IMG/VR virus record: IMGVR_UViG_3300024239_000011
Location: 62,001 to 126,000 of that record
Direction: 5' to 3' (one strand)
Length of the DNA stretch: 64,000 nucleotides
Shown: positions 1,547 through 54,980 of the stretch, piece after piece
How the letters are laid out: every line of letters starts with the position of its first letter
Position numbering within the stretch: the stretch's first letter is position 1
The notes under the pieces: model-generated
Told to the model about the DNA's origin: nothing
The model's database searches: none
Seen by the model: only the letters and a program-made list of their open reading frames with translations
Program-made: the position numbers and the translations under genes

Positions 1547-2185
1547 ATGAGCGCCCGTTTCAAATATCAAACTACACATCATTTTGAGTGGTCGCCCGGT
1601 GTGTCGAACGACGACGAGGTGCTGAAATCCTCTGCTCATTTTGTTGGGAAGCGTGTCATCGCTACCAAAAAGATGGATGGTGAGAACACCAGCATCTATT
1701 GGGACAGTTATATGCACGCCCGCAGCATTGATGGGCATGGTCACGAAAGCCAGGACTGGGTGAAGGGTCAAGTGGTGCCTTATGTGGCGCCGCACCTCCC
1801 CGAAGGCTGGCGCATCTGCGGCGAGAATCTGTATGCGAAGCATTCACTCGCCTACGACAATCTCCCGACCTATTTCATGGTTTTCTCGATCTGGGATGCC
1901 GAGAACCGCGCCCTGTCCTGGGATGACACCAAGGAATGGTGCGAACTGCTGGGGCTTCAGACCGTACCGGTTCTCTATGACGGTATTTGGGACGAAAAAA
2001 TCATCCGACAACTGGCAACCCAACTCGACCTGAACACGGACGAGGGGTATGTTGTGCGGGTAGCGGACTCATTCAGTTTTCAAGATTTTGTGATGTCGCT
2101 CGCTAAGTACGTCCGCAAAGGGCATGTCCAGACGGATCGTCATTGGAAACGTACCTGGGTTCCAAATAAACTCATCAATTCATAG
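1547..2185 (+). CDS. ATP-dependent RNA ligase family protein
   Basis: Nucleotidyltransferase motif I KMDGEN, ICGEN, FMVFSI, EGYVVR, KYVR. Confidence 0.85.
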   Translation: MSARFKYQTTHHFEWSPGVSNDDEVLKSSAHFVGKRVIATKKMDGENTSIYWDSYMHARSIDGHGHESQDWVKGQVVPYVAPHLPEGWRICGENLYAKHSLAYDNLPTYFMVFSIWDAENRALSWDDTKEWCELLGLQTVPVLYDGIWDEKIIRQLATQLDLNTDEGYVVRVADSFSFQDFVMSLAKYVRKGHVQTDRHWKRTWVPNKLINS

Positions 2186-2596: not shown

Positions 2597-3154
2597 TCAT
2601 TTTCCAACAGCCTGACTGAAACGGGGTTCTGCAATTCCAGTTGCAAAAATCCACCGGAACCCATTGTGTGCCCTAATTCCATAGGAGCCGAGTTCAATAT
2701 CATGATAGGTGATGTCGAACCCTTCGGGGGTGGCGATGATTTTTGTCCCATCACCGATTAAGTCGTTGAACCAACCAGCACATTCCGACACCAAGTTCAT
2801 TAATTCAAACGACGAAACCACATCAGTTTGAATAAGTTCCAGTTTCATAAAATACTGTTGATGAAGGGTATCCAATATCGGTTCATTTCGGAAACATGGC
2901 GTCAACGCACAGTACCGACCCGGCGGCAGTTTTCCGACCGTGTGAAGGTAAAGAAACGATTGTTCAGCCGAACCTACCAGATCGCCGTAATCAGTTACAA
3001 ACCCGTTATCGCGCCCATGAAAAGTTGCATGGGTGATCTCCGATGGAACTATCCACGGCACTTCAAGATACATGAAGCCAAGGCGGGTATAATGATCGAG
3101 GGAACGTGTGAGGTTCCCCCAATTAATCACGGGATGTGCGCTGTCCATCGTCAA
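2597..3154 (-). CDS. minimal class II aminoacyl-tRNA synthetase-like catalytic core
   Basis: EVPW, TPCFRNE (motif 2-like), FMKLEL, IELGSYG, GIAEPR (motif 3-like); no anticodon domain. Confidence 0.6.
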   Translation of the reverse strand: MTMDSAHPVINWGNLTRSLDHYTRLGFMYLEVPWIVPSEITHATFHGRDNGFVTDYGDLVGSAEQSFLYLHTVGKLPPGRYCALTPCFRNEPILDTLHQQYFMKLELIQTDVVSSFELMNLVSECAGWFNDLIGDGTKIIATPEGFDITYHDIELGSYGIRAHNGFRWIFATGIAEPRFSQAVGK

Positions 3155-4751: not shown

Positions 4752-4937
4752 AATGAGAAAGCCGCCCAATTGGGCGGCTTTCCAGTTAACAATGCTGTCG
4801 TTATTATTCGCAGCTTTGTGGCTGGTCAGTGATTTGACAGGAGGCTCGTAGACCAGCCACATTTTGTCTACGTTTTATTTATACTCTGTTCAATTTAATT
4901 TTCCGAGTTTGCGCACATCCTATACGTGAGATATAGA

Positions 4938-6209: not shown

Positions 6210-6335
6210 ATGAATAGAATATTTCCTACTCGCGAAAGTGTCAAAAACATTTTGACCACATATGCGGTTTAGCTTACCATCCCGCAACTCGTGCCATTTT
6301 GGCTGCCAAGATTCGCTTATAAGGATAACCCGTCG

Positions 6336-7661
6336 ATGACCGTCAAATCCCATCACGATGACGATGATGAGCCAACGATGGAAGATATTCTGACAAGCAT
6401 TCGGCGTGTCCTGACCGAAGACGATGACGATGTGTTTCAAGAAAAACCAACCGCACACGATGATATCGACGCGATGTTTTCTGAAAAAATTCCACAATCT
6501 TCGACGGGGTGCCGTGGCAGCGACGACGAAGAAGCTCTCATGCGTGAATGGGCGGCAATGGCAGGGCGCAACGAACCGGATGAACCGGATGAGAATGATA
6601 CCGATGGCATGGCAGCCGAATGGGAAGCCATGCTCGGTGGTTGTGATGGGGATTGCGAACATTGCGATGACAACACCCCCATGGAGTCCACCCGAGTGTT
6701 AAATCAAGACGAAATCGATTCGCTTCTAGGATTCGATGACGACCATGGGCGCGGTGACAATATGTCTGGTATACAGTGTATTCTCAATTCCGCCCTTGTG
6801 TCATACGAACGACTTCCCATGCTGGAAGTGGTATGTGATCGTTTAGTGCGTACATTATCTACATCCTTGCGGAATTTCTTCAACGATAACGTCGAAGTGT
6901 CGCTGGACAACATTCTGTCGCTTCGTTTCGGCGACTATCTGAACTCGATTCCGCTGCCTGCCATGCTGGCGGTATTCAAAGCCGAAGAATGGGACAATCA
7001 CGGTCTATTGACCATCGATTCGTCGCTGATCTACTCAACGGTCGATGTGCTGCTGGGTGGTCGTCGCGGCACGGCGGCTATGCGCATTGAAGGTCGCCCT
7101 TACACCACCATCGAGCGTGCCTTGGTAGAACGCATGGTGCATGTCGTAATGTCGGAAATGTCTACGGCTTTCGATCCGGTGTCACCCGTAACGTTTCGTC
7201 TTGACCGGATGGAAACCAATCCGCGCTTTGCCGCCATCTCACGTCCCAATAATGCGGTAATTGTGGTCAAATTGCGCATTGACATGCAAGATCGGGGCGG
7301 GCGCATGGAATTGCTATTGCCCTATGCTACCCTAGAACCTATCCGCGAATTATTGCTTCAACATTTCATGGGAGAAAAATTTGGTCGCGACTCGATCTGG
7401 GAAACCCACTTAGCCGAAGAACTATGGAAAAGCGAGATTGAAGCTGAGGTCGTGGTTGCGGAAGCTAAATCAACTCTTAACACGATACTCAATTTGAAAG
7501 TTGGGGATACGTTAGACCTTGGTCGTCGCCGCCCACATTATAAAATGGTTTGCTCGAATGTCGTGGTCGGGCACTGCGTCAACAGTAATACCGATGATAA
7601 AGATGACATCATGGGCATGACTGATGTTTCGGTCGTCACCCTCTTCCCGAAAGGTAATTAG
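6336..7661 (+). CDS. fliM: flagellar motor switch protein FliM with PopZ-like N-terminal helix
   Basis: MAAEWEAML, RVLNQDEIDSLLGF, YERLPMLEVVCDRLVR, RFGDYLNSIPLPAML, GGRMELLLPYATLEPIRELL; N-term EPTMEDILTSIRRVLTEDD. Confidence 0.95.
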   Translation: MTVKSHHDDDDEPTMEDILTSIRRVLTEDDDDVFQEKPTAHDDIDAMFSEKIPQSSTGCRGSDDEEALMREWAAMAGRNEPDEPDENDTDGMAAEWEAMLGGCDGDCEHCDDNTPMESTRVLNQDEIDSLLGFDDDHGRGDNMSGIQCILNSALVSYERLPMLEVVCDRLVRTLSTSLRNFFNDNVEVSLDNILSLRFGDYLNSIPLPAMLAVFKAEEWDNHGLLTIDSSLIYSTVDVLLGGRRGTAAMRIEGRPYTTIERALVERMVHVVMSEMSTAFDPVSPVTFRLDRMETNPRFAAISRPNNAVIVVKLRIDMQDRGGRMELLLPYATLEPIRELLLQHFMGEKFGRDSIWETHLAEELWKSEIEAEVVVAEAKSTLNTILNLKVGDTLDLGRRRPHYKMVCSNVVVGHCVNSNTDDKDDIMGMTDVSVVTLFPKGN

Positions 7662-9008: not shown

Positions 9009-9508
9009 TTTTTTACCTGTGCAGCCAGTGCCTCAACTGCTTGATGCATCCGAATAAGGTCATTCTCCAACTTAGCAAACCCAGGATGAGGGACAAATTG
9101 CGGGGGTGGGGGTAATGTGGGTGGGGCATTGATTGTTATCGGTACTGTCGGGGCGGGCGGTGGTGTATTCGGCTGTACGATCACCGGGGCGCGTTCTACC
9201 GGGGCAATTTTTACCACATCCACCTTCCCAATGGGGACCAGTGGTTGAACTACAATTGTAGTAGTGTTTGGTTTCACGTTGGGGGGTATTGGCACCACTT
9301 TGACCAACGGAACTGTACCGGGGTTTGGCGAAACCACTTGTTGCGGTGATTCTGTTCCAAACACCGAAGAACCGGCAACCAGCGCCACAATGATGGCACT
9401 GATCATAAAGACCATACCACTAAAATTACGCAATTGGTTAGACGCCGACACGCGGAAAACGACGAACGCCATAATTGCCGCGATGGTAATCAGGGTGAGG
9501 ATGCCCAT
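9005..9508 (-). CDS. membrane-anchored proline-rich protein
   Basis: two N-terminal hydrophobic segments, Pro/Val-rich region, short coiled coil. Confidence 0.65.
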   Translation of the reverse strand: MGILTLITIAAIMAFVVFRVSASNQLRNFSGMVFMISAIIVALVAGSSVFGTESPQQVVSPNPGTVPLVKVVPIPPNVKPNTTTIVVQPLVPIGKVDVVKIAPVERAPVIVQPNTPPPAPTVPITINAPPTLPPPPQFVPHPGFAKLENDLIRMHQAVEALAAQVKK

Positions 9509-10665
9509 TAGCGCATCCCCACTGCCTGATATACCTGATTCATTGTCTGCTGAGCAATGGTATCCACCTGCGCAGCACCCGTGGCAAGATGAGCATCGAC
9601 TACTTCCGGATGAGCGATGTATTCCCGCATGCGCTTCCCAATGGGAACAATTACGTCCACCAATGCATCAGTAACCGCAGGCTTTAATTTCCCAAAGCCC
9701 TGACCACCGAATTGGGCACAAGCTTCATCTAACGTCATCCCCCGAAGAACCGCGTAGATTGTCATAAGGTTCTTGGCACCAAGCCGACCTTCCAATCCTA
9801 CTGCCTCACCGGGCAATAGATCGGCATCCGTGGTTGCCCTCTTGATTTTCTTGGCGATTTGGTCGGCAGTGTCCGTCAGGAAAACAACTTCCTCTTCCGT
9901 TTCCATGGTGGACTTGGACATCTTCCGATCCGGATACCGCAGCGACATAATACGGGCACCGGTTTCGCTGATGATATCCTGGGGAACCGGGAAAATATCC
10001 CCGAACTGATGATTGAAAGACCGCACGATCTGGCGTGCAAGCTGAAGGTGCTGCACTTGGTCATCACCCACGGGAACATGGGTCGCCTTGTACAGCAGGA
10101 TGTCAGCAGCCATCAGCACTGGGTACATATACAAACCGGCACCGATGCTTTCGCTCTGAGTGTTCTCGTAAGCGTCAAGAATTTCGATGGCTTCCGCGCG
10201 ACGTTGTTCATCGGTGCGGGTATCGTCAAACCCTTCCTGCTGGTATAGGGTATTGCTGATGGACAGACCCGCTTCGAGAAGTTGTTCTAACTTCTCGTCC
10301 ACCGAAATACCAGCTTTCGCTTTGAACTGAGTCATTCGATTCAACCAGCCCATCCGCGCCTGGGTTGTTAATACCCAGGCAAGCTGGGAATGACCGGCGA
10401 CGCGGCTTTGTTGGAAGATCGAAGACCGCTCGGGATCGACACCGCATGCCAGATAGGCAGCCACCGTGGAACGGATGCTGTTACGCAGCACCGCTGGATT
10501 TTGCGGTACCGTGATGGCGTGAAGGTCTACGACGCAATAGATGCATTCGTGGTGATCTTGCAAGTCCACCCACTGCTTCAGAGCGCCCAGATAGTTGCCA
10601 AGGTGCAGAATTCCGCTCTGTGTCGCCGTGCCGGTAGGCTGAACTCCGGAAAATACCCTACCCAT
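9508..10665 (-). CDS. trpS: tryptophanyl-tRNA synthetase with about 50 aa insertion
   Basis: VFSGVQPTG, HLGNYLG, VDLHAIT, YPVLMAADILLY, VPVGDDQVQHL, KMSKS. Confidence 0.95.
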   Translation of the reverse strand: MGRVFSGVQPTGTATQSGILHLGNYLGALKQWVDLQDHHECIYCVVDLHAITVPQNPAVLRNSIRSTVAAYLACGVDPERSSIFQQSRVAGHSQLAWVLTTQARMGWLNRMTQFKAKAGISVDEKLEQLLEAGLSISNTLYQQEGFDDTRTDEQRRAEAIEILDAYENTQSESIGAGLYMYPVLMAADILLYKATHVPVGDDQVQHLQLARQIVRSFNHQFGDIFPVPQDIISETGARIMSLRYPDRKMSKSTMETEEEVVFLTDTADQIAKKIKRATTDADLLPGEAVGLEGRLGAKNLMTIYAVLRGMTLDEACAQFGGQGFGKLKPAVTDALVDVIVPIGKRMREYIAHPEVVDAHLATGAAQVDTIAQQTMNQVYQAVGMR

Positions 10666-10774
10666 TATCTCTACCCCGATTATGCATAAACTCATCAACA
10701 GGATGGCAGCCAAAACCGACTTTGGCAAGTTCTTTGCGGTATGGATGCCATCCAACGTTGATCGGGTGGAAGTA

Positions 10775-11866: not shown

Positions 11867-13072
11867 TCAGCCATTGGCGGCGACACCAACCGGCGTAGTC
11901 GCATTGACCGTCATGATGAACGGAGCATCAGCCGTGATCATCTTGGGGGCTTCGCTCTGCTTCAACGCCTCGATGGTTTCATATGCACCACGCAGCATAC
12001 CGTCCTTCAGACGCTTGTCCTCGGCTTCGTATTCCGCCTGAGTCAGCGCACGGCGCTGCATGCCCGCCTTGATCACGTCCACGGTGCCGGTGATCATGCG
12101 CAGATAAGCGTCGTTTGCCTGCTTGGCAGTCGAAGCCGAAATCAATTCCTGCTCAATGGTCTTTTGTACAGCCACCGCCGAATCCGCAGCCTGATTGGCG
12201 CTCATGACAATTACACTATTGGTGGCTTCCGTGATGGCTTGCAGACCACCGGAAGCCTGATCCAGAGCGGAACGAATGATGCAGGCGAGCATCTTGTCCT
12301 TCCAAATCGGCAGCATCCCAACCACAGCGGTGTTGATTTTGTCCGCCATGTTGTAGCACTGCATTCCCAGGTATCGGTACTCGGCAAGGGTACCAATGGT
12401 CGCCATCCGCAGACCCAGATAGTCGCCCTTCTTGCGATCCAATGCCTGAATCGATTCGTTGATACGAGCAACGTTCTCCATAATGCCCATATCGTTGGCG
12501 CCCTGCGCTTTATCAGACCATTCCTTGAGTTCGGATTGGGCGTCAATCAGCGCAACTTCAATCGCGGCGATCAGGATGCTGTAGGTGTGGTAGTCCTGAA
12601 CCTTCTCCGCATAAGCGAGCTTCAGCAGTTCGATGTACCGCATCAGTTCCGCAGTCTTGGTATCGAGTTCGGTGGCAACCCGCAGGCATGACCCATGTAC
12701 CGTTTCAAACTCGGAACGGAAACTTTCGATGGCAGCTTCGACACCACCCTTCAGGTCCATCCACTTCTTTGCGATCCATCCCATATTGGGATGCGGAAGT
12801 TTGGAAACGTCCACGCCGCGCACCTTGTTGGACATGTCGGTAAGCTTGTCACCGATTTCCTTGATGTCCTTGGTCTTGAATTTGGACAACGGGTCGTCCG
12901 CAACGTTGGAAGGACGACGCAACCGGTCCATACCAATGTTCAGCAAGCTGCGCTGGTCGTGGATGTTGATGTTCTGACGTACTGCCTTAACCTGATCGCG
13001 CACAGCAGGCGTCATATTGTCATATTGGGTCACCGCCAGGGCACGACCATCCACCGTATTAAGCGCACTCAT
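11867..13072 (-). CDS. TelA/KlaA toxic-anion resistance family protein
   Basis: long coiled coil, ADKINTAVVGMLPIWKD, ITEATNSVI; GGAGG RBS 7 nt before MSALNTVD. Confidence 0.85.
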   Translation of the reverse strand: MSALNTVDGRALAVTQYDNMTPAVRDQVKAVRQNINIHDQRSLLNIGMDRLRRPSNVADDPLSKFKTKDIKEIGDKLTDMSNKVRGVDVSKLPHPNMGWIAKKWMDLKGGVEAAIESFRSEFETVHGSCLRVATELDTKTAELMRYIELLKLAYAEKVQDYHTYSILIAAIEVALIDAQSELKEWSDKAQGANDMGIMENVARINESIQALDRKKGDYLGLRMATIGTLAEYRYLGMQCYNMADKINTAVVGMLPIWKDKMLACIIRSALDQASGGLQAITEATNSVIVMSANQAADSAVAVQKTIEQELISASTAKQANDAYLRMITGTVDVIKAGMQRRALTQAEYEAEDKRLKDGMLRGAYETIEALKQSEAPKMITADAPFIMTVNATTPVGVAANG

Positions 13073-13304
13073 TGATTGTCCTCCACCATTGGCCAAATAC
13101 CATGCATTAGCAATTTTCGCTTTCTTCATTGCCTCTTGTTCCAAGATGGCAAGAATTTGGGCTGTTTTACCCGGTTGGTTCTTTGCTTTGAAACGCGCAA
13201 TTCGACGTGTTATGAACAGAGGGCGAAGAATTGCGTCAAAACGCTCGTAACGGATACGAGCGTTTTCCGCCGCCGCCCGCTCCCGTGCTTTTGATGCAAT
13301 TCGA

Positions 13305-13913
13305 TTACTCACCATTAACACCTTTACGATTTGCCATTTCTACAAACACGTTTTGATCCACATATAAACCAATCACATCACCGCGTAAAAGCTGATCACG
13401 CTGAGCCTCGAAAACACCTTTCATGTGTGCCAGGGTTTCTGGAAACATATCCAAGGCACGTTTTGCATCTTTGTCCATGCCTCGATAGTTGGCATTTACC
13501 GCAAGGAAGTTTTCAAGAATTTTAACTGTCTCGGTCAGTGTATATGTGTCGAAATTAGTCTGTAAAATCGAACGCGGGTCTTGCTTAAACGTCTCCATGA
13601 TTTGATCCGCTAACGCAGCAAGATCAAGAACATGACTCCGTTGTATACGAGAAAATCCTTTGTTATCCGCCAATACCCGGATGCGCTCGGCATTTTGCAC
13701 ACCGTTCTTGATTGCCTTGATAATCTCGGCGCGATCTGCCCCTTTGGTCTCGGGAAACTCCAAATCGCTCGGTTTCTCGTGATATACTAGATAGAGAACC
13801 ACCCAGGAAACGAGTCCACCACCAATGCAATACACAAGTGGGAATTCCAAGAGGAACCAAAACCCAAAGGTAAGTGCCAGACAGGCAATTCCGGTACCAA
13901 TGGCAGTGGACAC
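13305..13913 (-). CDS. XpaC-like (5-bromo-4-chloroindolyl phosphate hydrolysis family) membrane protein
   Basis: two N-terminal TM helices, IMETFKQDP, C-terminal helical bundle; canonical position upstream of telA. Confidence 0.7.
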   Translation of the reverse strand: MSTAIGTGIACLALTFGFWFLLEFPLVYCIGGGLVSWVVLYLVYHEKPSDLEFPETKGADRAEIIKAIKNGVQNAERIRVLADNKGFSRIQRSHVLDLAALADQIMETFKQDPRSILQTNFDTYTLTETVKILENFLAVNANYRGMDKDAKRALDMFPETLAHMKGVFEAQRDQLLRGDVIGLYVDQNVFVEMANRKGVNGE

Positions 13914-15658: not shown

Positions 15659-15708
15659 ATTGGTTATTTATAAGCTTTTAGCCGCACATGATCAAGAAGA
15701 AATACACC

Positions 15709-16776: not shown

Positions 16777-17175
16777 TTGCTTTGTTAAACCCCCAAACGA
16801 ATCTTAGTAAAGCCTGGGAAAATTATCCCACGACCCAATGCATGAATCACTACCACGACCCCGGTAGGTTGCACAAGACCCATTTGCATACATCATATAT
16901 TTCGAGCAACGTGGTATGGGAATAAGATAGCGTTGCTATAAGGAAATGAAAGGTACCCACCGAGTTCGCCAAAGATTCCATAAGGATTACCAAGACTAGC
17001 GTATTTTCGGGACATGATCGACAAGCTAGAAATAGAAAAAGCACCATCCCTGCAATTAAGGATAGCGCCTTTTCACCCGTTAGCATCGCATCACGCAAGT
17101 ACCGGAATATCTCCCGGCGGGCTGCCTGTTAGGTCACAACACATTCTATGTAGTACCAACGTCCCAAGCAGATTT

Positions 17176-17289
17176 TGGAGCGGGAGAAGGGATTCGAACC
17201 CTCGACATCAACCTTGTTAAGCCTACACCGTGACGGACACGCCTTATAGGCTTAGGCAAGGTTGCGCTCTTCCACTGAGCTACACCCGC
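17176..17289 (-). tRNA. tRNA-Gly(GCC) with 39-nt anticodon-loop insertion (17216-17254)
   Basis: removing the insert gives CAACC-TT-GCC-AA-GGTTG; U73-CCA; one acceptor mismatch. Confidence 0.85.
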
Positions 17290-17437
17290 ATGTTTGTATT
17301 TATATATAAACCCAAAAACTTGCACATTTGTCTCTTCTACTTGACACTACAATTAGAAACTGTATAGTAATCAGACCTACGATGGCGTGTGGATGTTCCT
17401 GCGCTATGAAGTGAAACGCATTTTCTAGGGGCGACAC

Positions 17438-17845
17438 ATGGGTAACGCGGTTCATGCGCAATTGGTGTTCGGGATCAATTTTGAGGAAATGCGCCCGTTT
17501 CCCGAAACGTTTGAAGCGTTTGAGGACTTGATCATTGCCGAATCCGGCATTGAAGTTGTTCCCTATGGCGATACCGCGTGGGACGAATTCCGTAATCGCG
17601 TCTATGATCTCGAAAGAGCATATCCGTTGGAGATCATCCGCCACTGTCGTGGAACATATGTCATGTACATCCTCGCCGCTCGCCAACCGCAGTTTTCATC
17701 GTGGCGCGGCGAGACGAAAATCATCGACCCGGCTAAACTGATTGTAGCCCCTGAAGTCGTTGCCGCGATGATGGAATTCTGTAAACGGTACGACCTTCCC
17801 TGGACGGAACCGCAATGGCATCTTTGTCCGTACAGCGAGGAATAG
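17438..17845 (+). CDS. hypothetical protein
   Basis: 135 aa ORF downstream of a sigma70-type promoter (17341-17368). Confidence 0.7.
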   Translation: MGNAVHAQLVFGINFEEMRPFPETFEAFEDLIIAESGIEVVPYGDTAWDEFRNRVYDLERAYPLEIIRHCRGTYVMYILAARQPQFSSWRGETKIIDPAKLIVAPEVVAAMMEFCKRYDLPWTEPQWHLCPYSEE

Positions 17846-18137
17846 AATGTCGGTTGCCACTGCTTATAAAGCGGTTCGTGGGTATCTTGAACTGATCTTG
17901 GGTTAAAATTCACATTCACCGGGCATGATACGTGGTGTCGCATCTACACTAAGAATCGCATTCTGTTCCGTGAACATCGGGAAGGTCTGGCGAACGTATT
18001 GGTTGATGCCGGTTTGCCGTTCTGTTCGAGTCGTTGATGCGACCGGGAATACACTGAGCGAATTCGAATACGGGGAAGACGGCACTCCGTATGGGCAATA
18101 AAAAAACCCCGGTACCTATCGGTACCGGGGTTTTTAT

Positions 18138-18252
18138 TGGTGCTGACGGGGAGAATCGAACTCCCGACCTCCGCTTTGCAAAGCCTATTCCGTAAATTAC
18201 TGCGCCTAATAGGCTTGACCAAAGCGGTGCTATACCACTAAGCCACGTCAGC
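18138..18252 (-). tRNA. tRNA-Thr(GGU) with 40-nt anticodon-loop insertion (18178-18217)
   Basis: removing the insert gives CCGCT-TT-GGT-AA-AGCGG; perfect acceptor GCTGACG/CGTCAGC, A73-CCA. Confidence 0.88.
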
Positions 18253-18254
18253 AT

Positions 18255-18330
18255 TGGAGCGGGTGATCGGATTTGAACCGATGACATCGACCTTGGAAGG
18301 GTCGCGTTCTACCCCCTGAACTACACCCGC
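18255..18330 (-). tRNA. tRNA-Gly(UCC)
   Basis: canonical cloverleaf. Confidence 0.92.
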
Positions 18331-18849
18331 ACCTCATCCTTGTAGCAAGACTATTTAGCACGGTCAATATTCTTTTTGTCCCTTATCCTCCAATCTGATC
18401 GGTGGTAGTGCCTCATCAACCCCGTCAAAAATGACAGAAAGATAGTCTTGCCCAAAATCCCTTACAATTCTGGTGCGCAAACTAACACTCCGTGCGGTTG
18501 CCTCTTCAATTGAACGTTGCTTTTTCAAATATTTTCTATCCATACAATTTCCTTTCGATTACCGGGTTGCTTGACCCGACGTTCAAAACCCCTTATACTA
18601 TCTAAGGTTTGAACAATTATGGTTAAAACAGCATGTTTCACAGCAATCTCGCCATACGCGACCGTACCCGGAAGAGTGCCGCGCCGCGTATCGACCCCAG
18701 CGCGCCGGTTTACCAGTTTAAGGCGGAAGGGTTTATTGGTGGTCGTTTTGTCGTCAAGACCATTTGGGCACGGTCGGACGTGGAAGCGTCTTCCAAAGCG
18801 CGTCGTTCGTTTGATATGTCCAGCGAAATCACGATGTACTCGGTATAAT

Positions 18850-19154: not shown

Positions 19155-19248
19155 TGGAGGAAAGGGTCGGACTCGAACCGACATACCCCTGCGTTTGCAG
19201 GCACCTGATTTGCACTCAAGGACCGTCGCCTATTCCGGTCACCTTTCC
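19155..19248 (-). tRNA. tRNA-Cys(GCA) with long class II variable arm
   Basis: GGAAAGG/CCTTTCC, U73, loop GT-GCA-AA, arm CCTGC-AAAC-GCAGG. Confidence 0.8.
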
Positions 19249-21236: not shown

Positions 21237-21319
21237 TGGTGCCGGGTGAGGGACTCGAACCCCCGATGTTTGTATCCCGACTTACGAAGTCGGTGCTGTC
21301 GCCGCTGAGCCAACCCGGC
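21237..21319 (-). tRNA. tRNA-Thr(CGU), 12-nt variable region
   Basis: CCGAC-TT-CGT-AA-GTCGG. Confidence 0.88.
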
Positions 21320-23529: not shown

Positions 23530-25083
23530 TTACCAGTGTGCCAAGATCAGCGGCGTGTCTTGATAAGACTGCCAAATTCGTTCGGTGATATATGGCATCA
23601 TCGGATGTGCCAGACGTAGGCATTGATCGAGGCACCGCATAATCGTTCCCAATGCATCCATGTCGTTCTGATCGTACAAACGATCCTTGGACGCCTCGAT
23701 GTACCAATCGCAGAACTCGTGTTTGAAGAACAATCGGAACGCATCCGCCGCTGCTCGGTAATCAAATGCATCCAGGGCATTTGCCATAGTACGTTTTGTT
23801 TGATCGAGTGATGCGAGGATACGCAGATCATCAGGATGTTGAGACTCGTTCCAGGCAGATGGACGACCCATCCGGTCGAAATGACTGAGACAGAACCGCG
23901 AGGCTTGCCACAGTTTGTTTGCGAACCGTTTTGCAGAATCGAAAATATCGTTCGACAATCGGATATCCTGCCCGGCGGTACCGTTCTCCAAGAACCCGAA
24001 CCGCAAAGCGTCACATCCGAATTTTTCGATGATTAGCAGAGGATCAATGCCGTTTCCCTTCGACTTACACATTTTTTCCCCATTGGCGTCACGAATGATG
24101 CCGTGGAGATAGATGGTGTCAAATGCCATCTGATCGGTCAGGGCAAGCCCCATCATCAACATACGGGCACACCAGAAGAATAGGATGTCCGCTGCCGTCT
24201 CGATCATACTCGCCGGGTAGAAAGTTCGCAGATCGGGCGTGTCGTTTGGCCAGCCCAAAATGGCGAAGGGCCAAATTGCGGACGAGAACCATGTATCAAG
24301 GACATCGTGATCTTGTCGGATGTCATCCCCCAGAATAGCTCTGGCATCCGCCTCTGTACGTGCCGCGCAAAAAGCACCAGAACCGTTGTACCAAATCGGG
24401 ATACGGTGTCCCCACCAAATCTGACGCGAAATACACCACGGCTCGATGTTTTCGAGGAAATGACAGAAGGTTTTCCCTTCATATTCCGGGATAATCTTTA
24501 GTTCACCCGCATGATAACGTGCAAGAAGGTCGGTAGCCAGTTGACTAGTGTCCAACCACCACTGCCCATCCTGACGGTAAATCAATCCTTTTTCGAAACA
24601 CCGGTTGAACGCCTCTAGGGTGGCGGTGGGATGTTCGGGGCTAAGCGTATACCATTCGCGCGACCAATCACAGCTTGCGCCCAGACGGCGAATTTGCTGG
24701 GTGATGCGCCCACCCGTCGTTTTCTGCCATGCATCTGCTTTGGCAAAATACTGGTCACGGGTTGGTTCGGTAATCCCTTCGGCGGCAAGCTCAGCCTTAA
24801 TCTTAGCATCGGTTGCCAAACCCGCATGATCAGTACCGGGCTGCCATAGTGCATTAAAGCCCTGCATGCGCTTGTACCGGATCGTCGTATCCTGAAGGGT
24901 GGTGAAAAGTGCATGCCCCATGTGCAGTTGCCCAGTGATATTGGGCGGCGGCATTGGGATGTTGAAGGCTGGTGCCTCTGGGTTCATGCTTGGCTTAAAA
25001 AAGCCATTATTTTCCCAATGCGCGTAGATGTTCGGTTCTTCGGTTTTATAGTCGAAGTTCCGAGTTAGTTTGTTACGTCCCAC
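23530..25083 (-). CDS. valS: compact valyl-tRNA synthetase lacking CP1 editing domain and C-terminal coiled coil
   Basis: PPPNITGQLHMGHAL, PGTDHAG, WCISRQIWWGHRIP, DVLDTWFSS, DILFFW, KMCKSKGN; only 517 aa; start uncertain. Confidence 0.92.
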   Translation of the reverse strand: MGRNKLTRNFDYKTEEPNIYAHWENNGFFKPSMNPEAPAFNIPMPPPNITGQLHMGHALFTTLQDTTIRYKRMQGFNALWQPGTDHAGLATDAKIKAELAAEGITEPTRDQYFAKADAWQKTTGGRITQQIRRLGASCDWSREWYTLSPEHPTATLEAFNRCFEKGLIYRQDGQWWLDTSQLATDLLARYHAGELKIIPEYEGKTFCHFLENIEPWCISRQIWWGHRIPIWYNGSGAFCAARTEADARAILGDDIRQDHDVLDTWFSSAIWPFAILGWPNDTPDLRTFYPASMIETAADILFFWCARMLMMGLALTDQMAFDTIYLHGIIRDANGEKMCKSKGNGIDPLLIIEKFGCDALRFGFLENGTAGQDIRLSNDIFDSAKRFANKLWQASRFCLSHFDRMGRPSAWNESQHPDDLRILASLDQTKRTMANALDAFDYRAAADAFRLFFKHEFCDWYIEASKDRLYDQNDMDALGTIMRCLDQCLRLAHPMMPYITERIWQSYQDTPLILAHW

Positions 25084-28117: not shown

Positions 28118-28790
28118 ATAGCCTGCCAGGGAATTTCTTCCCCAGCGGCGTTGTTCTCGATACCCTCTTCCCGATTACTCGGTATCCCCTGTCCCAGGTA
28201 GATCGCTTTCGCGACGGGCGCTGGCTATTGGGTTTCCCCTCAACCGACCAGTCCAGCGTAAGGTGCTTCGTTTTGACTCAACTGCGTCCAGTTTCCTAGC
28301 ACAGTCCCTAAGGACATCGCAGCGGAGTGCATCTATTTATACATCCACCCACGATGGGTCAATTTCAACAGTCGGTGCCTTTCCTTAGCTCATCGGGGTC
28401 GGAAATCAAAACTTTCGTTCTGCAAACTGTCGTGTTGAAGGGATGCCAGACTCCCTTCCGCCAACCAACGGGAACTATATCTGACCGTCACCCCGTTTAT
28501 GCTCTTGCGTTTTATCCCGCATCGGTTCTGCGGTAGATGATATTTAGTCCTTACGACTTGGCCTCATCCAGCGGCGCTCGCCCGAACCTGATCCACTTTA
28601 CCGTGAACTTCATCTTTAACGACCGCTAGGCGCCCGAGCGGTCGGGCACCTGTGGTATACGCGGGGTGCCGCCACGATCAAGCCCAGCAGAATACCCGTC
28701 ATCGTCTGGACGGGCACAGAATGACGAACACCAAGCGCGATTGCTTCCGGGTCACCACCACGACAGGGTTTAACAAGAAACCACGTCGTG
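28118..28790 (-). ncRNA. block of up to three candidate structured RNAs, each behind a TAAATA core
   Basis: no credible ORF; many GC stems with GAAA/GTAA loops; TAAATA at 28795, 28541 and 28334. Confidence 0.5.
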
Positions 28791-28804
28791 TGTCTATTTA
28801 TATT

Positions 28805-32467: not shown

Positions 32468-32536
32468 ATAAATGACAACTCGCGTCGCCATGACCAAACT
32501 ATTTATACGAACCGCTCGGGCGGCGCAATAAGAAAA

Positions 32537-34421: not shown

Positions 34422-34505
34422 TGGCGATCCTGAGAGGATTCGAACCCCCCTTTTCAGCATCCGACTACGGTTAAGCGGGTAGAAGCCGCCCCCGGCTACA
34501 GGATC
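34422..34505 (-). tRNA. rearranged tRNA-Arg(UCU)-like gene
   Basis: perfect acceptor and T arms; anticodon arm 8 nt after acceptor; GGAT-GC-TGAAAA after it. Confidence 0.7.
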
Positions 34506-36916: not shown

Positions 36917-37008
36917 TGGCTCCCACTTGAGGTTTCGAACCTCACCCCGCATCGCTGCGAGACTTCCGGTTAACAGCCGGATACCTTCACCAAGCCGGTC
37001 CAGTGGGA
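36917..37008 (-). tRNA. tRNA-Asn(GUU) with long variable arm
   Basis: TCCGG-CT-GTT-AA-CCGGA; arm CTCGCA-GCGA-TGCGGG. Confidence 0.85.
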
Positions 37009-37622: not shown

Positions 37623-37712
37623 TGGAGGACACGGTGGGAATTGAACCCACGAGGGGCTTTCGCCCGTGCGATTAAAAGTCGCATGTTCTCAACCAACAAG
37701 AACGTCGTGTCC
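37623..37712 (-). tRNA. tRNA-Lys(UUU) with class II arm, U73
   Basis: TGCGA-CT-TTT-AA-TCGCA; arm GGGC-GAAA-GCCC. Confidence 0.82.
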
Positions 37713-37871: not shown

Positions 37872-37956
37872 TGGAGCGGGTAGGGGGAATCGAACCCCTT
37901 TCCAGTTAAGGGCTTGCTTGGAAGGCAAGTGAGCAATCCATTGCTCGACTACCCGC
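37872..37956 (-). tRNA. tRNA-Gly(UCC) variant, long D stem and variable region
   Basis: CTTGC-CT-TCC-AA-GCAAG. Confidence 0.82.
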
Positions 37957-37968
37957 ATATTGTGATGT

Positions 37969-38056
37969 TGGAGACGCGAGTGGGAGTCGAACCCACCTGA
38001 CCTTTCGGTACAAACGGTTTTGCAGACCGCCGACTAAACCGCTCATCCATCGCGCC
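37969..38056 (-). tRNA. tRNA-Cys(GCA) with class II arm
   Basis: GCGGT-CT-GCA-AA-ACCGT; arm ACC-GAAA-GGT; U73. Confidence 0.85.
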
Positions 38057-40863: not shown

Positions 40864-40939
40864 TGGTGCCACCACCCGGATTCGAACCGGGAACCTTCAC
40901 TTTACCAAAGTGCTGCTCTACCATTGGAGCTATAGCGGC
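40864..40939 (-). tRNA. tRNA-Thr(GGU), uninterrupted
   Basis: canonical. Confidence 0.92.
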
Positions 40940-41622: not shown

Positions 41623-41711
41623 TGGAGAACCGGGTGGGAATCGAACCCACGACGGGCTTTCGCCAGCAGTTTAAGAGACTGTTCCTACCAACCAACAGTA
41701 GGCTCCGGTTC
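41623..41711 (-). tRNA. tRNA-Lys(CUU) with class II arm, U73
   Basis: ACAGT-CT-CTT-AA-ACTGC; arm GGC-GAAA-GCC. Confidence 0.82.
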
Positions 41712-41899: not shown

Positions 41900-41975
41900 T
41901 GGTTGCGGGGGTGGGATTTGCACACCACGACCTCTTGGGTATGAACCAAGTAAGCTACTGCTGCTCTACCCCGCA
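41900..41975 (-). tRNA. initiator-like tRNA-fMet(CAU)
   Basis: TGCGGGGTAGAGCAG body, loop TT-CAT-AC. Confidence 0.82.
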
Positions 41976-42287: not shown

Positions 42288-42363
42288 TGGTTGCGGGGGT
42301 GGGATTTGCACACCACGACCTCTTGGGTATGAACCAAGCAAGCTACTGCTGCTCTACCCCGCA
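42288..42363 (-). tRNA. initiator-like tRNA-fMet(CAU), near duplicate of 41900
   Basis: one difference seen. Confidence 0.82.
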
Positions 42364-42633: not shown

Positions 42634-42709
42634 TGGCACCAAGGGTCGGTATCGAACCGACATGTCTGGTTTTTCAGACCAGTGCATGAACCATCACTGC
42701 CACCTTGGT
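42634..42709 (-). tRNA. tRNA-Phe(GAA), G73
   Basis: loop CT-GAA-AA. Confidence 0.87.
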
Positions 42710-42748
42710 ATAAATACTACTAACTAAGCTTAATTTCAGGTAATCGTC

Positions 42749-43417: not shown

Positions 43418-43500
43418 TGGCGCCGGATGAGGGACTCGAACCCCCGGTGTTGGTATGCCGCGTTACAAAGGCGGTGCTGTCGCCACTGAGCCAATCCGGC
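43418..43500 (-). tRNA. tRNA-Thr(UGU), 12-nt variable region, G73
   Basis: paralog of 21237; loop TT-TGT-AA. Confidence 0.85.
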
Positions 43501-51847: not shown

Positions 51848-52273
51848 TTACCCCAACATACGCAGGATAAACGGAACGCTTGGGTCACGAACTTCAATGA
51901 TTGCGTTCCACGGCACGAATACCGAAGTTGCAACCCCACTGAAGTAAATTACCACCGTGAACCCTTCATCAGAAATTTCCAGATCATGGAACTGGTTCTG
52001 AAGCACGATGACAGTTTCCCCACGCAAATGAAGGGGGAACCCCGATACCCCGAAAATCGTGGTATCGAGGGTGATGTAGAAATGGTGTCCGTGATCATCA
52101 ACATTAGGATCATCACGGAAATTGGATAAGACCTCACGAATCATCCGAATGTTTGCAAGATGGTGTTCTCGCCGGAAGATACCGTCGTAATCAAATGCAG
52201 TGGGACTGTTCCCGGTCGCCGCTGATTTGTCTACCTGGGATTTTTTACCAGGGAAATGAATTACGTTTGTCAT
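51848..52273 (-). CDS. sspB: alphaproteobacterial-type SspB ClpXP adaptor, core domain only
   Basis: HHFYIT.DT...GV...IVLQNQF.DL....F.V...FSG.....VPW.AI....DPSV.F.L. Confidence 0.85.
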   Translation of the reverse strand: MTNVIHFPGKKSQVDKSAATGNSPTAFDYDGIFRREHHLANIRMIREVLSNFRDDPNVDDHGHHFYITLDTTIFGVSGFPLHLRGETVIVLQNQFHDLEISDEGFTVVIYFSGVATSVFVPWNAIIEVRDPSVPFILRMLG

Positions 52274-53439: not shown

Positions 53440-53549
53440 ACGACCTATGTTTTGTACGGTTGAGTGATTCTTAGGTTATCCAATGCATAACGGTCAAAAT
53501 TTCTTTTACATAGAAAACAAGGCATAAATACTATCTGAAAGGATTTCAG

Positions 53550-53876
53550 ATGAACAAATACGAGAGGTTGAAGCAAGACCTCGACACAAATGGCACCGGT
53601 ACCATGAAATGTTTCGGATCATCCATGCTTCCAATTCTTACCAATGGAACTACAAACACTTACGTTCGGGAAAATGAGTACAAAATTGGTGATATTGTAT
53701 TCTGTAAAGTTAATGGAAGATATATAGACGCCCACAAGATAACAAAAAAAGCCGCTGATGGGAGATACATGATTGCGAACAATAACGGTCATGAAAATGG
53801 ATGGACCAGAACCATTTATGGCAGAGTAATCAAAGCGGTCGATAATCACGGAAACGTGAAAGAATTCACCCGGTAG
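53550..53876 (+). CDS. peptidase S24/S26-like protein
   Basis: GSSMLP..GDIV...HKI...NGWT. Confidence 0.65.
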   Translation: MNKYERLKQDLDTNGTGTMKCFGSSMLPILTNGTTNTYVRENEYKIGDIVFCKVNGRYIDAHKITKKAADGRYMIANNNGHENGWTRTIYGRVIKAVDNHGNVKEFTR

Positions 53877-53975
53877 GCGCCCTACGGCGCCTTTTTCATT
53901 TTATACGCACTCGAAAAGTTTTAATGAGATCGGGTATCCACTCCGCATTCTCAAAATCATCAAAATCCCGAGAAA

Positions 53976-54536
53976 ATGTTGATCATGCTACTAGTGACGT
54001 GGCGCGATGATGACGCGGTGGAGCGTCAGGCAAAAACTCTATTACATCCACGTGGATGGTTTGTCGCAGAGACGTATACACCAGACGAGGATGAGGATGA
54101 TGGAACCACGCTATTCCGCATTGAACCGTTCGTCGGACAACGAACAACTGAAATCCCGGACAAGCTTTATCACGCCACCCCTGCACAAAATGTCCCGCGC
54201 ATTCTCAAGCAAGGGCTGATCCCACAACGGGGAAAGCACACCGGAATGTTCGCGGCTACACCAAACCGAATCTATATCGCCAAATCACTTGCCTACGCCG
54301 TTGATATCAAGAATATGCTTCAGAAGCACGATGGCTACAGACAAGACTACGCGATCATCGAGATCGATACGACGAAACTCCGGAAGGGGACGAAATTCTA
54401 TATCGACCCGCAATACCATTCTGGCGTCTACACGACCACGCCTGTTCCACCCGCCGCGTTGCGCGTACTCGGCAATGAGGAAGTGGAACAGTGTCCGGAA
54501 CCGGATTTCGACTACGAACTAGCGATGAATGTCTAA
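53976..54536 (+). CDS. ART-fold protein, Tpt1/KptA-like
   Basis: LYHATP..NVPRILKQGLIP, IYIA, IIEID. Confidence 0.6.
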   Translation: MLIMLLVTWRDDDAVERQAKTLLHPRGWFVAETYTPDEDEDDGTTLFRIEPFVGQRTTEIPDKLYHATPAQNVPRILKQGLIPQRGKHTGMFAATPNRIYIAKSLAYAVDIKNMLQKHDGYRQDYAIIEIDTTKLRKGTKFYIDPQYHSGVYTTTPVPPAALRVLGNEEVEQCPEPDFDYELAMNV

Positions 54537-54636
54537 CAACCGAGCGATATAGCGTTCTGCGATTTGATCATGAAAAAGCCCCTTAATGGTCCAAACCTGC
54601 ATTAGTATTTAGCAAGTTCTCCCATTAAGGGGCTAT

Positions 54637-54930: not shown

Positions 54931-54980
54931 ATAGCGGTGGGAGGTATTTAGCAAAACCCCAACCCCACCGCAATAACTTT

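What the first reader, a model, noticed from the sequence alone, without database searches (positions are those of the whole stretch)
17176..18252. Two different tRNAs carry the same 39-40 nt anticodon-loop insertion
Seen: tRNA-Gly(GCC) and tRNA-Thr(GGU) are interrupted just 3' of the anticodon by TAAGCCTATAAGGCGTGTCCGTCACGGTGTAGGCTTAAC and CAAGCCTATTAGGCGCAGTAATTTACGGAATAGGCTTTGC. Both share an AAGCCTA/TAGGCTT stem, AGGCG and ACGG in the loop, and a terminal C facing G34. Precise removal restores 7-nt loops. They are too short for group I/II introns and I see no bulge-helix-bulge. Inference: a family of protein-spliced mini-introns, or a tiny mobile insert, in phage tRNAs; an RNA ligase and a Tpt1-like gene lie in the same window.
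Basis: partly seen in the sequence, partly recalled or inferred. Interest (0 to 1): 0.88.

Follow-up and report, generated by a model that had tools for sequence, protein, structure and literature searches.

The report
Hairpin mini-introns in phage tRNA genes
Two tRNA genes of a 543-kb uncultivated bacteriophage are each split just after the anticodon by a related 39-40-base hairpin. Similar hairpins sit at the same spot in tRNA-Gly genes of two other phage lineages, which points to an undescribed, probably protein-removed, kind of tRNA intron in bacterial viruses.

Summary
tRNA-Gly(GCC) (17176-17289, minus) and tRNA-Thr(GGU) (18138-18252, minus) each carry a 39/40-nt insert between nucleotides 36 and 37. 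Removing it restores canonical 75-nt tRNAs. The motif occurs only at these two sites in the window (0 expected by chance) and is identical in four independent assemblies.

New here: tRNA-Gly(GCC) genes in two other uncultivated phage lineages carry 44-nt and 24-nt hairpins at the same site. In all four inserts, intron base +i pairs with base -(i+2) over 9-10 bp, with compensatory changes. The inferred junctions therefore face each other across a helix with a 2-nt 3' stagger.

There is no bulge-helix-bulge, no group I/II core and no Rfam ribozyme match. The inserts are absent from cultured phages and from 185,579 reference genomes.

Best reading: a small family of structured, protein-dependent tRNA intervening sequences. 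My specific proposal is excision by an RNase III-class enzyme followed by sealing by an RNA ligase; a ligase with intact motifs lies at 1547-2185. Splicing itself is not shown, because no transcript data were available. The "Tpt1-like" gene is only weakly supported.

The parts
17176..17289 (-). Interrupted tRNA-Gly(GCC) gene with encoded CCA. 5' exon 17255-17289, insert 17216-17254, 3' exon 17176-17215.
   Evidence: Exons are 88% identical to the uninterrupted Atu_ph07 tRNA-Gly.
17216..17254 (-). 39-nt insert between nt 36 and 37. P1 helix: +1..+10 (17245-17254) pairs with -3..-12 (17218-17227). Inner loop AGG / G, then a small P2 hairpin.
   Evidence: Fold (z = -4.3 for the arm); pairing register; pair counts.
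18138..18252 (-). Interrupted tRNA-Thr(GGU) gene with encoded CCA. 5' exon 18218-18252, insert 18178-18217, 3' exon 18138-18177.
   Evidence: G1-C72, C2-G71 and no G3:U70, so Thr rather than Ala. The 3' half is 92% identical to phage tRNA-Thr genes.
18178..18217 (-). 40-nt insert between nt 36 and 37. Same P1 (7 bp identical to the Gly copy, 2 more bp compensated), same AGG/G inner loop and CG:CG start of P2, different P2 apex.
18255..18330 (-). Uninterrupted tRNA-Gly(UCC), 2 nt upstream of the interrupted tRNA-Thr. Probably the same transcript.
18100..18137 (.). G+C-rich 10-bp hairpin flanked by A and T runs, directly after the CCA of tRNA-Thr. Looks like a two-way intrinsic terminator.
   Evidence: Read directly from the sequence. 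The terminator portion of the Rfam Thr_leader model aligns here. The simple terminator scan did not list it.
17297..17304 (-). TATAAATA (T4 late-promoter consensus), 7 nt upstream of base 1 of the interrupted tRNA-Gly.
   Evidence: 7 copies in the window against 1.5 expected. Another copy lies 6 nt upstream of tRNA-Arg at 15658. Promoter function is inferred.
1547..2185 (+). ATP-dependent RNA ligase, nucleotidyltransferase domain only (212 aa). Candidate sealing enzyme.
   Evidence: PF09414, 3.5e-32. phrog_24030 'RNA ligase' matches only its residues 133-340; phrog_34045 matches full length. KMDG, EGYVVR and KYVRK motifs are visible in the translation.
53976..54536 (+). Weak Tpt1/KptA-like (ADP-ribosyltransferase-fold) ORF. 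Its link to the tRNA inserts is unproven.
   Evidence: PF01885 22.3 bits, below the cut-off of 26. PDB Tpt1 E = 0.017 over 27 residues. phrog_5470 E = 5e-4.

Best explanation
The two inserts belong to a small family of structured intervening sequences ('hairpin mini-introns') that cannot splice themselves and sit between nucleotides 36 and 37 of bacteriophage tRNAs. In the precursor, the anticodon stem continues through U32:A38 and U33:A37 and, past a one-base bulge or small internal loop, into a 9-10 bp intron helix. The two exon-intron junctions then lie opposite each other on one roughly 20-bp irregular helix, offset so that the excised hairpin would carry a 2-nt 3' overhang. I propose three steps. 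A double-strand-specific endonuclease of the RNase III class (host or phage) cuts both strands, leaving 3'-OH and 5'-phosphate ends. The two tRNA halves stay together through the cloverleaf. An ATP-dependent RNA ligase, most simply the phage enzyme at 1547-2185, then seals nt 36 to nt 37 and restores the 7-nt anticodon loop. Shown: the inserts, their exact position, the family, helix covariation, the constant junction register, intact exons, and a ligase with catalytic motifs. Inferred: transcription, excision, the identity of the nuclease, ligation, and transfer of the insert from one tRNA to the other within this phage. My rough probabilities: the hairpin is a selected RNA element, about 0.85; it is removed to give a working tRNA by some protein pathway, about 0.6-0.65; that pathway is RNase III plus ligase, about 0.25-0.3 overall.
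For: Precise removal restores canonical tRNA-Gly(GCC) and tRNA-Thr(GGU). Exons keep perfect cloverleafs and encoded CCA. A T4-late-type TATAAATA lies 7 nt upstream of the Gly gene, and a terminator hairpin lies directly after the Thr gene. The genes are identical in four assemblies. Same-site inserts occur in orthologous tRNA-Gly(GCC) genes (exons 83-93% identical) of two other uncultivated phage lineages: L113:4117-4160, identical in L134 (44 nt), and L131:6152-6175, identical in L132 (24 nt). In these genes the anticodon stems have also changed by compensated substitutions while carrying the insert. In all four inserts, base +i pairs with base -(i+2): 10, 9, 9 and 8 of 10 positions pair at offset 2, against 1-8 at other offsets. 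On the three-sequence alignment, 100% of 48 cells pair, 8 pairs (5 of the 9 in P1) change on both sides, 0 of 500 shuffles reach this, and slid registers pair only 31-56%. Below the junctions the helix continues: 35:-1 and 36:-2 pair in Thr and L113, G34:-1 pairs in Gly and L131, and U33:A37 and U32:A38 pair in all. That gives about 9-10 bp on each side of the inferred cuts. From established enzymology, RNase III cuts leave 2-nt 3' overhangs with 3'-OH and 5'-P ends, which are exactly the ends that ATP-dependent RNA ligases join without end healing. A ligase with KxDG, EGxxxR and KxxxK motifs is encoded 15 kb away.
Against: No transcript or spliced-junction data were available. No RNase III, EndA, RtcB or Pnkp appears among Pfam hits of genes in the window and about 17 kb beyond the start end and about 10 kb beyond the far end; the rest of the 543-kb genome was not seen. 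The upper helix is only 9-10 bp, with a mismatch, bulge or small loop right at the inferred cuts, which is short and irregular for a canonical bacterial RNase III double cut. The family is tiny (three lineages, four distinct inserts), so covariation rests on few sequences. Similarity between this phage's inserts and the other two lineages is weak outside the shared site, register and helix length. The ligase lacks the accessory domain of characterised relatives and could simply be a repair enzyme. An uninterrupted tRNA-Thr(GGU) exists at 40864-40939, so the interrupted Thr copy could be dispensable.
Confidence: 0.5

Rival explanations
1. The insert is a true protein-spliced intron, but it is cut by a metal-independent, cyclising endonuclease (an unrecognised phage enzyme, or a relative of anticodon nucleases or EndA). 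The resulting 2',3'-cyclic phosphate and 5'-OH ends are either healed (kinase/phosphoesterase), sealed by the ligase and cleared of a junction 2'-phosphate by the Tpt1-like protein, or joined directly by a host RtcB.
For: The evidence for a functional, removable insert is the same. An RNA ligase is present, as is a weak Tpt1/ADP-ribosyltransferase-like ORF. The AGG/G inner loop and the CG:CG base of P2, conserved between the two copies in this phage, look like a protein recognition site. Every protein-catalysed tRNA splicing pathway characterised so far (archaeal and eukaryal endonucleases) uses cyclising cleavage (established knowledge).
Against: No healing enzyme, EndA or RtcB was seen in the window or its immediate flanks. 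The Tpt1 match is below the family cut-off and partial. There is no bulge-helix-bulge. This model gives no reason for the constant 2-nt stagger.
Confidence: 0.2
2. The insert is never removed. The interrupted molecules act as tRNA-like RNAs with an extended anticodon arm, for example as decoys or sponges for host anticodon nucleases or other tRNA-binding defence proteins, or as an inert stored form.
For: Selection on the hairpin and the exons only requires that the whole RNA be functional, not that it be spliced. The phage carries more than 37 other tRNAs, including an intact Thr(GGU). From the literature, phage tRNAs are known to counter tRNA-targeting defences through anticodon-loop changes (PMC10264068, listed).
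Against: The insert sits exactly where clean removal gives a canonical loop in four of four cases, and the flanking loop bases (U32, U33, the anticodon, A37, A38) stay canonical. That is unexpected if decoding is never needed. No other tRNA-Gly(GCC) gene is in this window.
Confidence: 0.12
3. The insert is a DNA-level element: a small palindromic insertion that disrupts the target of a homing endonuclease or moves as a miniature mobile element. The interrupted genes would then be inactivated tRNA pseudogenes.
For: The tRNA arrays of all three lineages are packed with free-standing HNH, GIY-YIG and LAGLIDADG genes. In L113 and L131 such genes directly flank the interrupted tRNA-Gly. The helix arms resemble terminal inverted repeats. 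IS1595 and IS605-type elements lie about 1-3 kb upstream of the window start.
Against: There are only two copies in 543 kb, both at the same nucleotide of an anticodon loop, and none in intergenic DNA. There is no target-site duplication. In this phage no endonuclease gene adjoins either interrupted gene. Pseudogenes would not keep perfect cloverleafs with compensated stem changes across lineages that are 83-93% identical. An immunity role at the DNA level does not exclude RNA-level removal.
Confidence: 0.1
4. The insert, alone or with the tRNA body, is a very small self-cleaving or self-splicing RNA.
For: None specific. Small ribozymes can be about 40-50 nt.
Against: A permissive Rfam search matched no ribozyme family. 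The 24-nt family member is a plain 7-bp hairpin with a tetraloop. Apart from the helix, almost nothing is conserved across lineages.
Confidence: 0.03

Closest known systems
Archaeal and eukaryal tRNA introns (bulge-helix-bulge; EndA/TSEN endonuclease; RtcB or Trl1 plus Tpt1 ligation)
   Same: Short (tens of nt), non-catalytic, located in the anticodon loop just 3' of the anticodon, base-paired with the loop, and presumably removed by proteins and re-ligated. The apparent spread of one intron to the same position of another tRNA also has an archaeal precedent.
   Different: Position 36/37 rather than 37/38. There are no two 3-nt bulges separated by 4 bp; both junctions lie at the same end of one continuous helix. 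The carrier is a bacteriophage, and bacteria have no known splicing endonuclease.
RNase III-excised intervening sequences of bacterial 23S rRNA (Salmonella, Leptospira, alpha-proteobacteria)
   Same: An extended hairpin replaces a loop of a stable RNA. The inferred cuts lie across the base of the hairpin with RNase III geometry, in a bacterial setting.
   Different: rRNA fragments are not re-joined. Here the anticodon loop must be sealed for the tRNA to decode. These inserts are much shorter (24-44 nt against roughly 90-150 nt). RNase III dependence is only inferred here.
Group I introns in bacterial tRNA anticodon loops (cyanobacterial tRNA-Leu and tRNA-fMet, proteobacterial tRNA-Arg and tRNA-Ile)
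   Same: They interrupt the anticodon loop of bacterial-type tRNAs, and the exons form the normal cloverleaf.
   Different: Those are ribozymes of 200-300 nt; these are 24-44-nt hairpins with no catalytic core. A 2014 review states that all phage introns known then were in protein-coding genes despite the many phage tRNA genes (PMC3984707).
Phage T4 tRNA restriction-repair (PrrC cut, Pnkp healing, Rnl1 sealing)
   Same: A phage-encoded RNA ligase re-joins a break in a tRNA anticodon loop. This shows that the sealing step proposed here is ordinary phage biochemistry.
   Different: That pathway repairs damage to an intact host tRNA. No sequence is removed and no intron is involved.
Collaborative homing of intron plus free-standing homing endonuclease (T-even phage and cyanophage examples)
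   Same: The interrupted genes sit among free-standing HNH and GIY-YIG genes, and an insert at a conserved site could give immunity to cleavage and spread by recombination.
   Different: The known cases involve self-splicing group I introns in protein genes. No endonuclease specificity is known here, and in this phage no endonuclease gene is adjacent.

Membership tests
Bulge-helix-bulge (archaeal/eukaryal) tRNA intron | Both splice sites lie in 3-nt bulges separated by a 4-bp helix | tested here: not met
   Folds and the register table. The intron helix starts 0-1 nt after the 5' junction and ends 2-3 nt before the 3' junction, so there is no room for a 4-bp central helix plus bulges.
Bulge-helix-bulge (archaeal/eukaryal) tRNA intron | Canonical position between nt 37 and 38 | tested here: not met
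   Alignment to the uninterrupted Atu_ph07 gene and ARAGORN on the joined exons place the insert at 36/37. A 37/38 junction would put a pyrimidine at position 37 in three of the four inserts.
Bulge-helix-bulge (archaeal/eukaryal) tRNA intron | An EndA/Sen-type splicing endonuclease is available in the system | tested here: inconclusive
   No PF01974-type hit among genes of the window and about 10-17 kb beyond each end. About 450 kb of the genome and the host were not examined. The phage looks bacterial: FliM/FliN, T4 gp19, gp30.3 and gp9/10, an OmpA-like gene in the L131 relative, and closest tRNA matches in Agrobacterium and Caulobacter phages.
Group I / group II self-splicing intron | Catalytic core of about 200 nt or more (P3-P9, or domains I-VI) | tested here: not met
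   The inserts are 24-44 nt. Rfam finds a group I intron elsewhere in the window (54697-54900) but nothing at these sites, even at E up to 10.
Small self-cleaving ribozymes (hammerhead, twister, pistol, hatchet, HDV-like) | Match to the family covariance model or conserved core | tested here: not met
   The permissive Rfam search of 17100-18400 gave no ribozyme family.
RNase III-processed intervening hairpin | Junctions opposite each other on a helix with a 2-nt 3' stagger, and about one helical turn on each side | tested here: met
   Offset 2 is the best register in all four inserts. There are 9-10 bp above the junctions and 9-10 irregular bp below. The junctions are inferred from restoring the tRNA, not mapped on RNA.
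RNase III-processed intervening hairpin | Cleavage depends on RNase III and leaves 3'-OH and 5'-P ends | not testable with these tools
   Needs an enzyme assay or an rnc mutant.
REP / MITE-like palindromic mobile element | Many dispersed copies, mostly intergenic | tested here: not met
   Two copies in the 543-kb contig, both in anticodon loops. The only match in 185,579 reference genomes is a chance hit inside a dehydrogenase gene.
ATP-dependent RNA ligase (PF09414), ORF 1547-2185 | Nucleotidyltransferase motifs I (KxDG), IV and V | tested here: met
   PF09414 at 112 bits. KMDG, EGYVVR and KYVRK are seen in the translation.
ATP-dependent RNA ligase (PF09414), ORF 1547-2185 | Accessory OB or C-terminal domain, as in characterised Rnl2 and DraRnl enzymes | tested here: not met
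   The protein is 212 aa. It matches only residues 133-340 of phrog_24030, and no PDB sequence matched at E <= 0.01.
Tpt1/KptA RNA 2'-phosphotransferase, ORF 53976-54536 | Score above the family threshold over both lobes | tested here: not met
   PF01885 22.3 bits, below 26, covering profile positions 94-167 only. NCBIfam about 19 bits against a cut-off of about 235. PDB Tpt1 E = 0.017 over 27 residues.

The most novel reading that the evidence does not exclude
Bacteriophages have a protein-only tRNA splicing pathway unrelated to the archaeal/eukaryal one. A hairpin intron at position 36/37 is excised by an RNase III-class double-strand cut, and the anticodon loop is re-sealed by a phage RNA ligase. 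The intron can move between tRNA genes. This would be the first non-ribozyme intron class in the bacterial world and would give phage RNA ligases a physiological substrate beyond damage repair.
Probability: 0.28. Interest if true: 0.92.

Novelty: new variant of a known kind. Interest (0 to 1): 0.8.

Why it matters
Introns in bacterial and phage genes are thought to be self-splicing ribozymes. Protein-spliced tRNA introns are regarded as a hallmark of archaea and eukaryotes. A 2014 review noted that no phage intron had been found in a tRNA gene (PMC3984707), and seven full-text literature searches here found no report of short phage tRNA introns.

If these hairpins are removed, some enzyme pair in a bacterial system performs tRNA splicing. 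That makes three things directly testable:
- a new role for RNase III or an unknown nuclease;
- a natural substrate for the RNA ligases common in large phages;
- a way for phages to keep a tRNA inert, or invisible to host anticodon nucleases, until it is processed.

The precursor is small and can be made in vitro, so the question can be settled with ordinary laboratory strains and commercial enzymes.

Tried and rejected
- **Default gene finders.** Default ARAGORN and the Rfam gathering search missed the Thr gene. Intron-mode ARAGORN found both genes but with wrong anticodons.
- **Exact insert motif.** Scans of viral, metagenome and reference-genome collections returned only the source contig, plus one chance hit inside a dehydrogenase gene.
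- **Neighbouring ORF 17438-17845.** Searching relatives returned only the same phage.
- **Cultured phages.** blastn of the interrupted genes of all three lineages against 50,697 records gave only uninterrupted tRNAs.
- **Wasted scans.** Two loose scans were swamped: by chance hits in coding DNA, and by the TTGGT of ordinary D-loops. Filtering gave no new member.
- **Related tRNA arrays.** 79 phage tRNA-array loci (766 tRNAs), fetched through a distinctive 83-nt tRNA-Thr, held no further member.
- **Covariance model.** A model built from three family members re-found only its own training sequences in 1.8 Mb and did not recover the 24-nt L131 insert.
- **A general rule for all short viral tRNA inserts.** The generic D-arm/T-arm scan gave more than 100 interrupted tRNA-like genes. 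They are heterogeneous, many being eukaryote-style Tyr and Ile introns of giant viruses, and they do not share the 2-nt register. I therefore restrict the claim to the Gly/Thr family.
- **Readings considered and dropped.** Bulge-helix-bulge; small ribozymes; REP or IS200/IS605-type hairpin elements; target-site duplication (the AAG at the start of the intron helix and of the 3' exon is explained by A37, A38, G39); and a codon-like GGY triplet in the Gly introns pairing with the anticodon (absent from the Thr copy, so probably coincidence).
- **Walking the genome.** Looking about 10-17 kb beyond each end of the window for RNase III, Pnkp, RtcB or EndA found none.
- **Literature.** Searches found no prior description.
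Full report
**Observation**

On the minus strand, 17176-17289 and 18138-18252 are two tRNA genes. Each is interrupted directly after the anticodon.
- The inserts are 39 nt (17216-17254) and 40 nt (18178-18217).
- Rfam recognises the Gly gene as tRNA (53.3 bits) with a 43-nt local insertion in the anticodon loop.
- ARAGORN sees both genes only in intron mode and then misplaces the intron.
- Joining the flanks gives clean 75-nt cloverleafs with encoded CCA, called tRNA-Gly(gcc) and tRNA-Thr(ggt).
- The acceptor stem of the second gene (G1-C72, C2-G71, no G3:U70) and its similarity to phage tRNA-Thr genes support Thr rather than ARAGORN's Ala.
- The shared arms AAGCCTA/TAGGCTT with a 10-35-nt spacer occur at these two places only; no match occurred in 100 shuffles.
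- The same phage is present in three other assemblies from other samples, with both genes 100% identical. The inserts are therefore real and stable.

**Context**

The window is bases 62001-126000 of a 543,035-bp IMG/VR contig, IMGVR_UViG_3300024239_000011, which is the same as Ga0247724_1000001.
- It is a huge tailed bacteriophage. It carries T4-like gp19, gp30.3 and gp9/10 domains, many free-standing HNH, GIY-YIG and LAGLIDADG genes, aminoacyl-tRNA synthetases, FliM/FliN and TelA, and about 40 tRNA genes, all on one strand.
- Its nearest cultured matches are tRNA genes and a short HTH-gene segment in Agrobacterium, Caulobacter and Sinorhizobium phages.
- Agrobacterium phage Atu_ph07 has an uninterrupted tRNA-Gly(GCC) 88% identical to the exons, with loop TTGCCAA. 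This fixes the insertion between nt 36 and 37. For Gly alone a C makes 35/36 formally possible; the other family members remove that ambiguity.
- A T4-late-type TATAAATA lies 7 nt upstream of the Gly gene. The motif is enriched in the window, with 7 copies against 1.5 expected.
- The Thr gene follows tRNA-Gly(UCC) by 2 nt and is followed at once by a strong terminator-like hairpin.
- Both genes therefore look like expressed genes, but transcription is inferred.

**Anatomy**

Each precursor folds with the normal cloverleaf.
- The anticodon stem is extended by U32:A38 and U33:A37.
- Next comes a bulge or small internal loop containing part of the anticodon.
- Then comes a 9-10 bp helix (P1) formed by the two ends of the insert.
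- Inside P1, the two copies in this phage share an AGG/G internal loop and a CG:CG start of a second small hairpin whose apex differs completely.
- That mosaic (identical helix and inner loop, unrelated apex) argues for constraint rather than a very recent duplication.

**Relatives**

The exact motif is found nowhere else in IMG/VR, in the JGI metagenome contigs or in 185,579 reference genomes; the single genome hit is a chance match inside a dehydrogenase gene. Cultured phages have only uninterrupted versions.

Searching through the tRNA exons instead found two more uncultivated phage lineages whose tRNA-Gly(GCC) is interrupted at the same nucleotide:
- L113:4082-4198, identical in L134, with a 44-nt insert. 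Its 87-kb contig shares with the window an unusual 83-nt tRNA-Thr and a protein 48% identical.
- L131:6112-6210, identical in L132, with a 24-nt insert that is just a 7-bp hairpin with a tetraloop. Its contigs are 107 and 78 kb.

Exons are 83-93% identical between lineages, and their anticodon stems differ by compensated changes.

Counting from the junctions, intron base +i pairs with base -(i+2) in all four inserts: 10, 9, 9 and 8 of 10 positions. Other registers pair 1-8 positions. Compensatory changes occur at +2/-4, +4/-6, +5/-7, +6/-8, +7/-9 and +10/-12.

On the three sequences that MAFFT aligns cleanly:
- all 48 cells pair;
- 8 pairs (5 of the 9 in P1) change on both sides;
- no shuffle out of 500 reaches this;
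- slid registers pair only 31-56%.

The family is rare. There was no further member among 766 tRNAs of 79 related phage tRNA arrays, in 1.8 Mb searched with a covariance model, or in further pattern scans.

**What it is not**

- *Bulge-helix-bulge intron.* The helix begins 0-1 nt after the 5' junction and ends 2-3 nt before the 3' junction, so both junctions lie at the same end of one helix. They do not sit in two bulges separated by 4 bp. The position is also 36/37, not 37/38.
- *Group I or II intron, or a known small ribozyme.* The inserts are 24-44 nt, and Rfam gives nothing even at E = 10, although it does find a group I intron elsewhere in the window.
- *REP/MITE-type repeat.* There are two copies per 543 kb, both in anticodon loops, with no target duplication.

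**Mechanism proposed**

The register means that the excised hairpin would carry a 2-nt 3' overhang. The two inferred cuts also lie near the middle of a roughly 20-bp irregular helix, with 9-10 bp above and 9-10 bp below, counting the extended anticodon stem. This is the product geometry of RNase III-class enzymes, which leave 3'-OH and 5'-phosphate ends (established enzymology). Those ends need no healing before an ATP-dependent RNA ligase joins them.

Such a ligase is encoded at 1547-2185. It matches PF09414 at 3.5e-32 and shows KMDG, EGYVVR and KYVRK motifs. It consists of the nucleotidyltransferase domain only and resembles the C-terminal half of DraRnl-type phage ligases.

I therefore propose an RNase III-type excision by the host or a phage enzyme, followed by sealing of nt 36 to nt 37. 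This is an inference from geometry and gene content. No nuclease candidate was found in the window or about 10-17 kb beyond each end. P1 is short for a canonical RNase III double cut, and there is a mismatch or bulge at the site.

**Rivals**

- *Cyclising endonuclease.* Cleavage by such an enzyme, followed by healing and sealing, or by RtcB, would use the weak Tpt1-like ORF at 53976-54536. That match is below threshold and partial.
- *Not removed.* The RNA may act as a decoy or an inert tRNA-like molecule. Conservation alone cannot exclude this, but the canonical loop bases retained on both sides of every insert argue for eventual decoding.
- *DNA-level element.* Immunity to homing endonucleases fits the endonuclease genes flanking the interrupted genes in L113 and L131. 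It does not fit this phage, and it does not remove the need for RNA-level excision if the tRNA is used.
- *Self-splicing.* This is very unlikely.

**Novelty**

- A 2014 review states that all phage introns known then were in protein-coding genes, despite the many phage tRNA genes (PMC3984707).
- Seven full-text searches found no description of short tRNA introns in phages or bacteria.
- A generic scan shows that short extra segments in tRNA-like genes are common in IMG/VR. Many belong to giant viruses of eukaryotes or to unrelated groups, so they cannot be pooled with this family.

**Verdict**

The family and its structural conservation are shown. Splicing and its enzymes are inferred. The finding ranks high because it is cheap to test and, if true, adds a new kind of intron to the bacterial world.

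Noticed in passing
window 19155-19248, 37969-38056, 36917-37008, 37623-37712, 41623-41711, 37872-37956, 21237-21319, 43418-43500 (all minus): tRNAs of normally short-variable-arm identity (Cys, Asn, Lys, Gly-UCC, Thr) carry long structured variable arms (83-94 nt genes). Rfam scores one Cys(GCA) gene as tRNA-Sec (50.6 bits). The 83-nt Thr type recurs in 83 IMG/VR loci.
   Followed up: partly
window 34422-34505 (minus): A tRNA-like gene that ARAGORN reads with a four-base anticodon (ctta), i.e. an 8-nt loop. It is a possible frameshift-type or aberrant tRNA.
   Followed up: no
window 41903-41975 and 42291-42363 (minus): Two nearly identical tRNA-like genes (Rfam 49 bits, CAU anticodon, unusual T-loop GTGCAAATC, ending in CAA rather than CCA). 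ARAGORN missed both.
   Followed up: no
window 52273-55574 (minus), with 54697-54900: An Rfam group I intron lies between two ORFs that both hit the Gad2 family (PF26128). This is probably one gene split by an intron of about 1.5 kb. The weak Tpt1/ADP-ribosyltransferase-like ORF 53976-54536 lies inside that gap on the opposite strand.
   Followed up: partly
window 6291-7661 and the two following small ORFs; 11867-13321; 49441-51117; 9508-10755; 23530-25083; 2597-3154: The phage encodes FliM and FliN flagellar-switch homologues, TelA, a flotillin/SPFH protein, a TrpRS/TyrRS-like and a class I aminoacyl-tRNA synthetase, and a fragment resembling the PheRS alpha subunit.
   Followed up: no
window 15665-15672, 17297-17304, 28334-28341, 28795-28802, 32500-32507, 4876-4883 (minus); 42709-42716 (plus): The T4 late-promoter consensus TATAAATA is enriched (7 copies against 1.5 expected). 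It sits 6-7 nt upstream of two tRNA genes, which suggests T4-like late transcription of part of the tRNA array.
   Followed up: partly
L127:6508-8843 (about 1-3 kb upstream of the window start): An IS1595-family transposase gene and an IS605 OrfB/TnpB (Cas12f-like) gene sit inside the phage genome next to the RNA ligase region.
   Followed up: no
L004, L127-L129, L453, L454 (ENA ERZ27245855 k141_178484): One assembly carries this phage on an 869,618-bp contig, against 543,035 bp in IMG. This could be a larger genome, a concatemer or a chimeric assembly.
   Followed up: no
IMG/VR loci L026, L033, L034, L054, L064, L071, L097, L100, L109, L114; and L010, L060, L074, L096, L103, L104: Two recurrent groups of tRNA-like genes have normal D and T arms but an unusual middle. 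One has a hairpin followed by TACAGCAAC. The other contains CTCATGGTGAAGGACC-N-AAATGCC. Several are on phage contigs of 200-370 kb.
   Followed up: no
L133:9964-10100 and 11918-12086 (same genes in L130): A 251-kb phage contig with a dense tRNA array has tRNA-like genes carrying 60-nt and 94-nt inserts of a different kind. Other loci (L012, L072, L075, L092, GVMAG contigs) show eukaryote-style introns in tRNA-Tyr(GUA) and tRNA-Ile(UAU), typical of giant viruses.
   Followed up: partly
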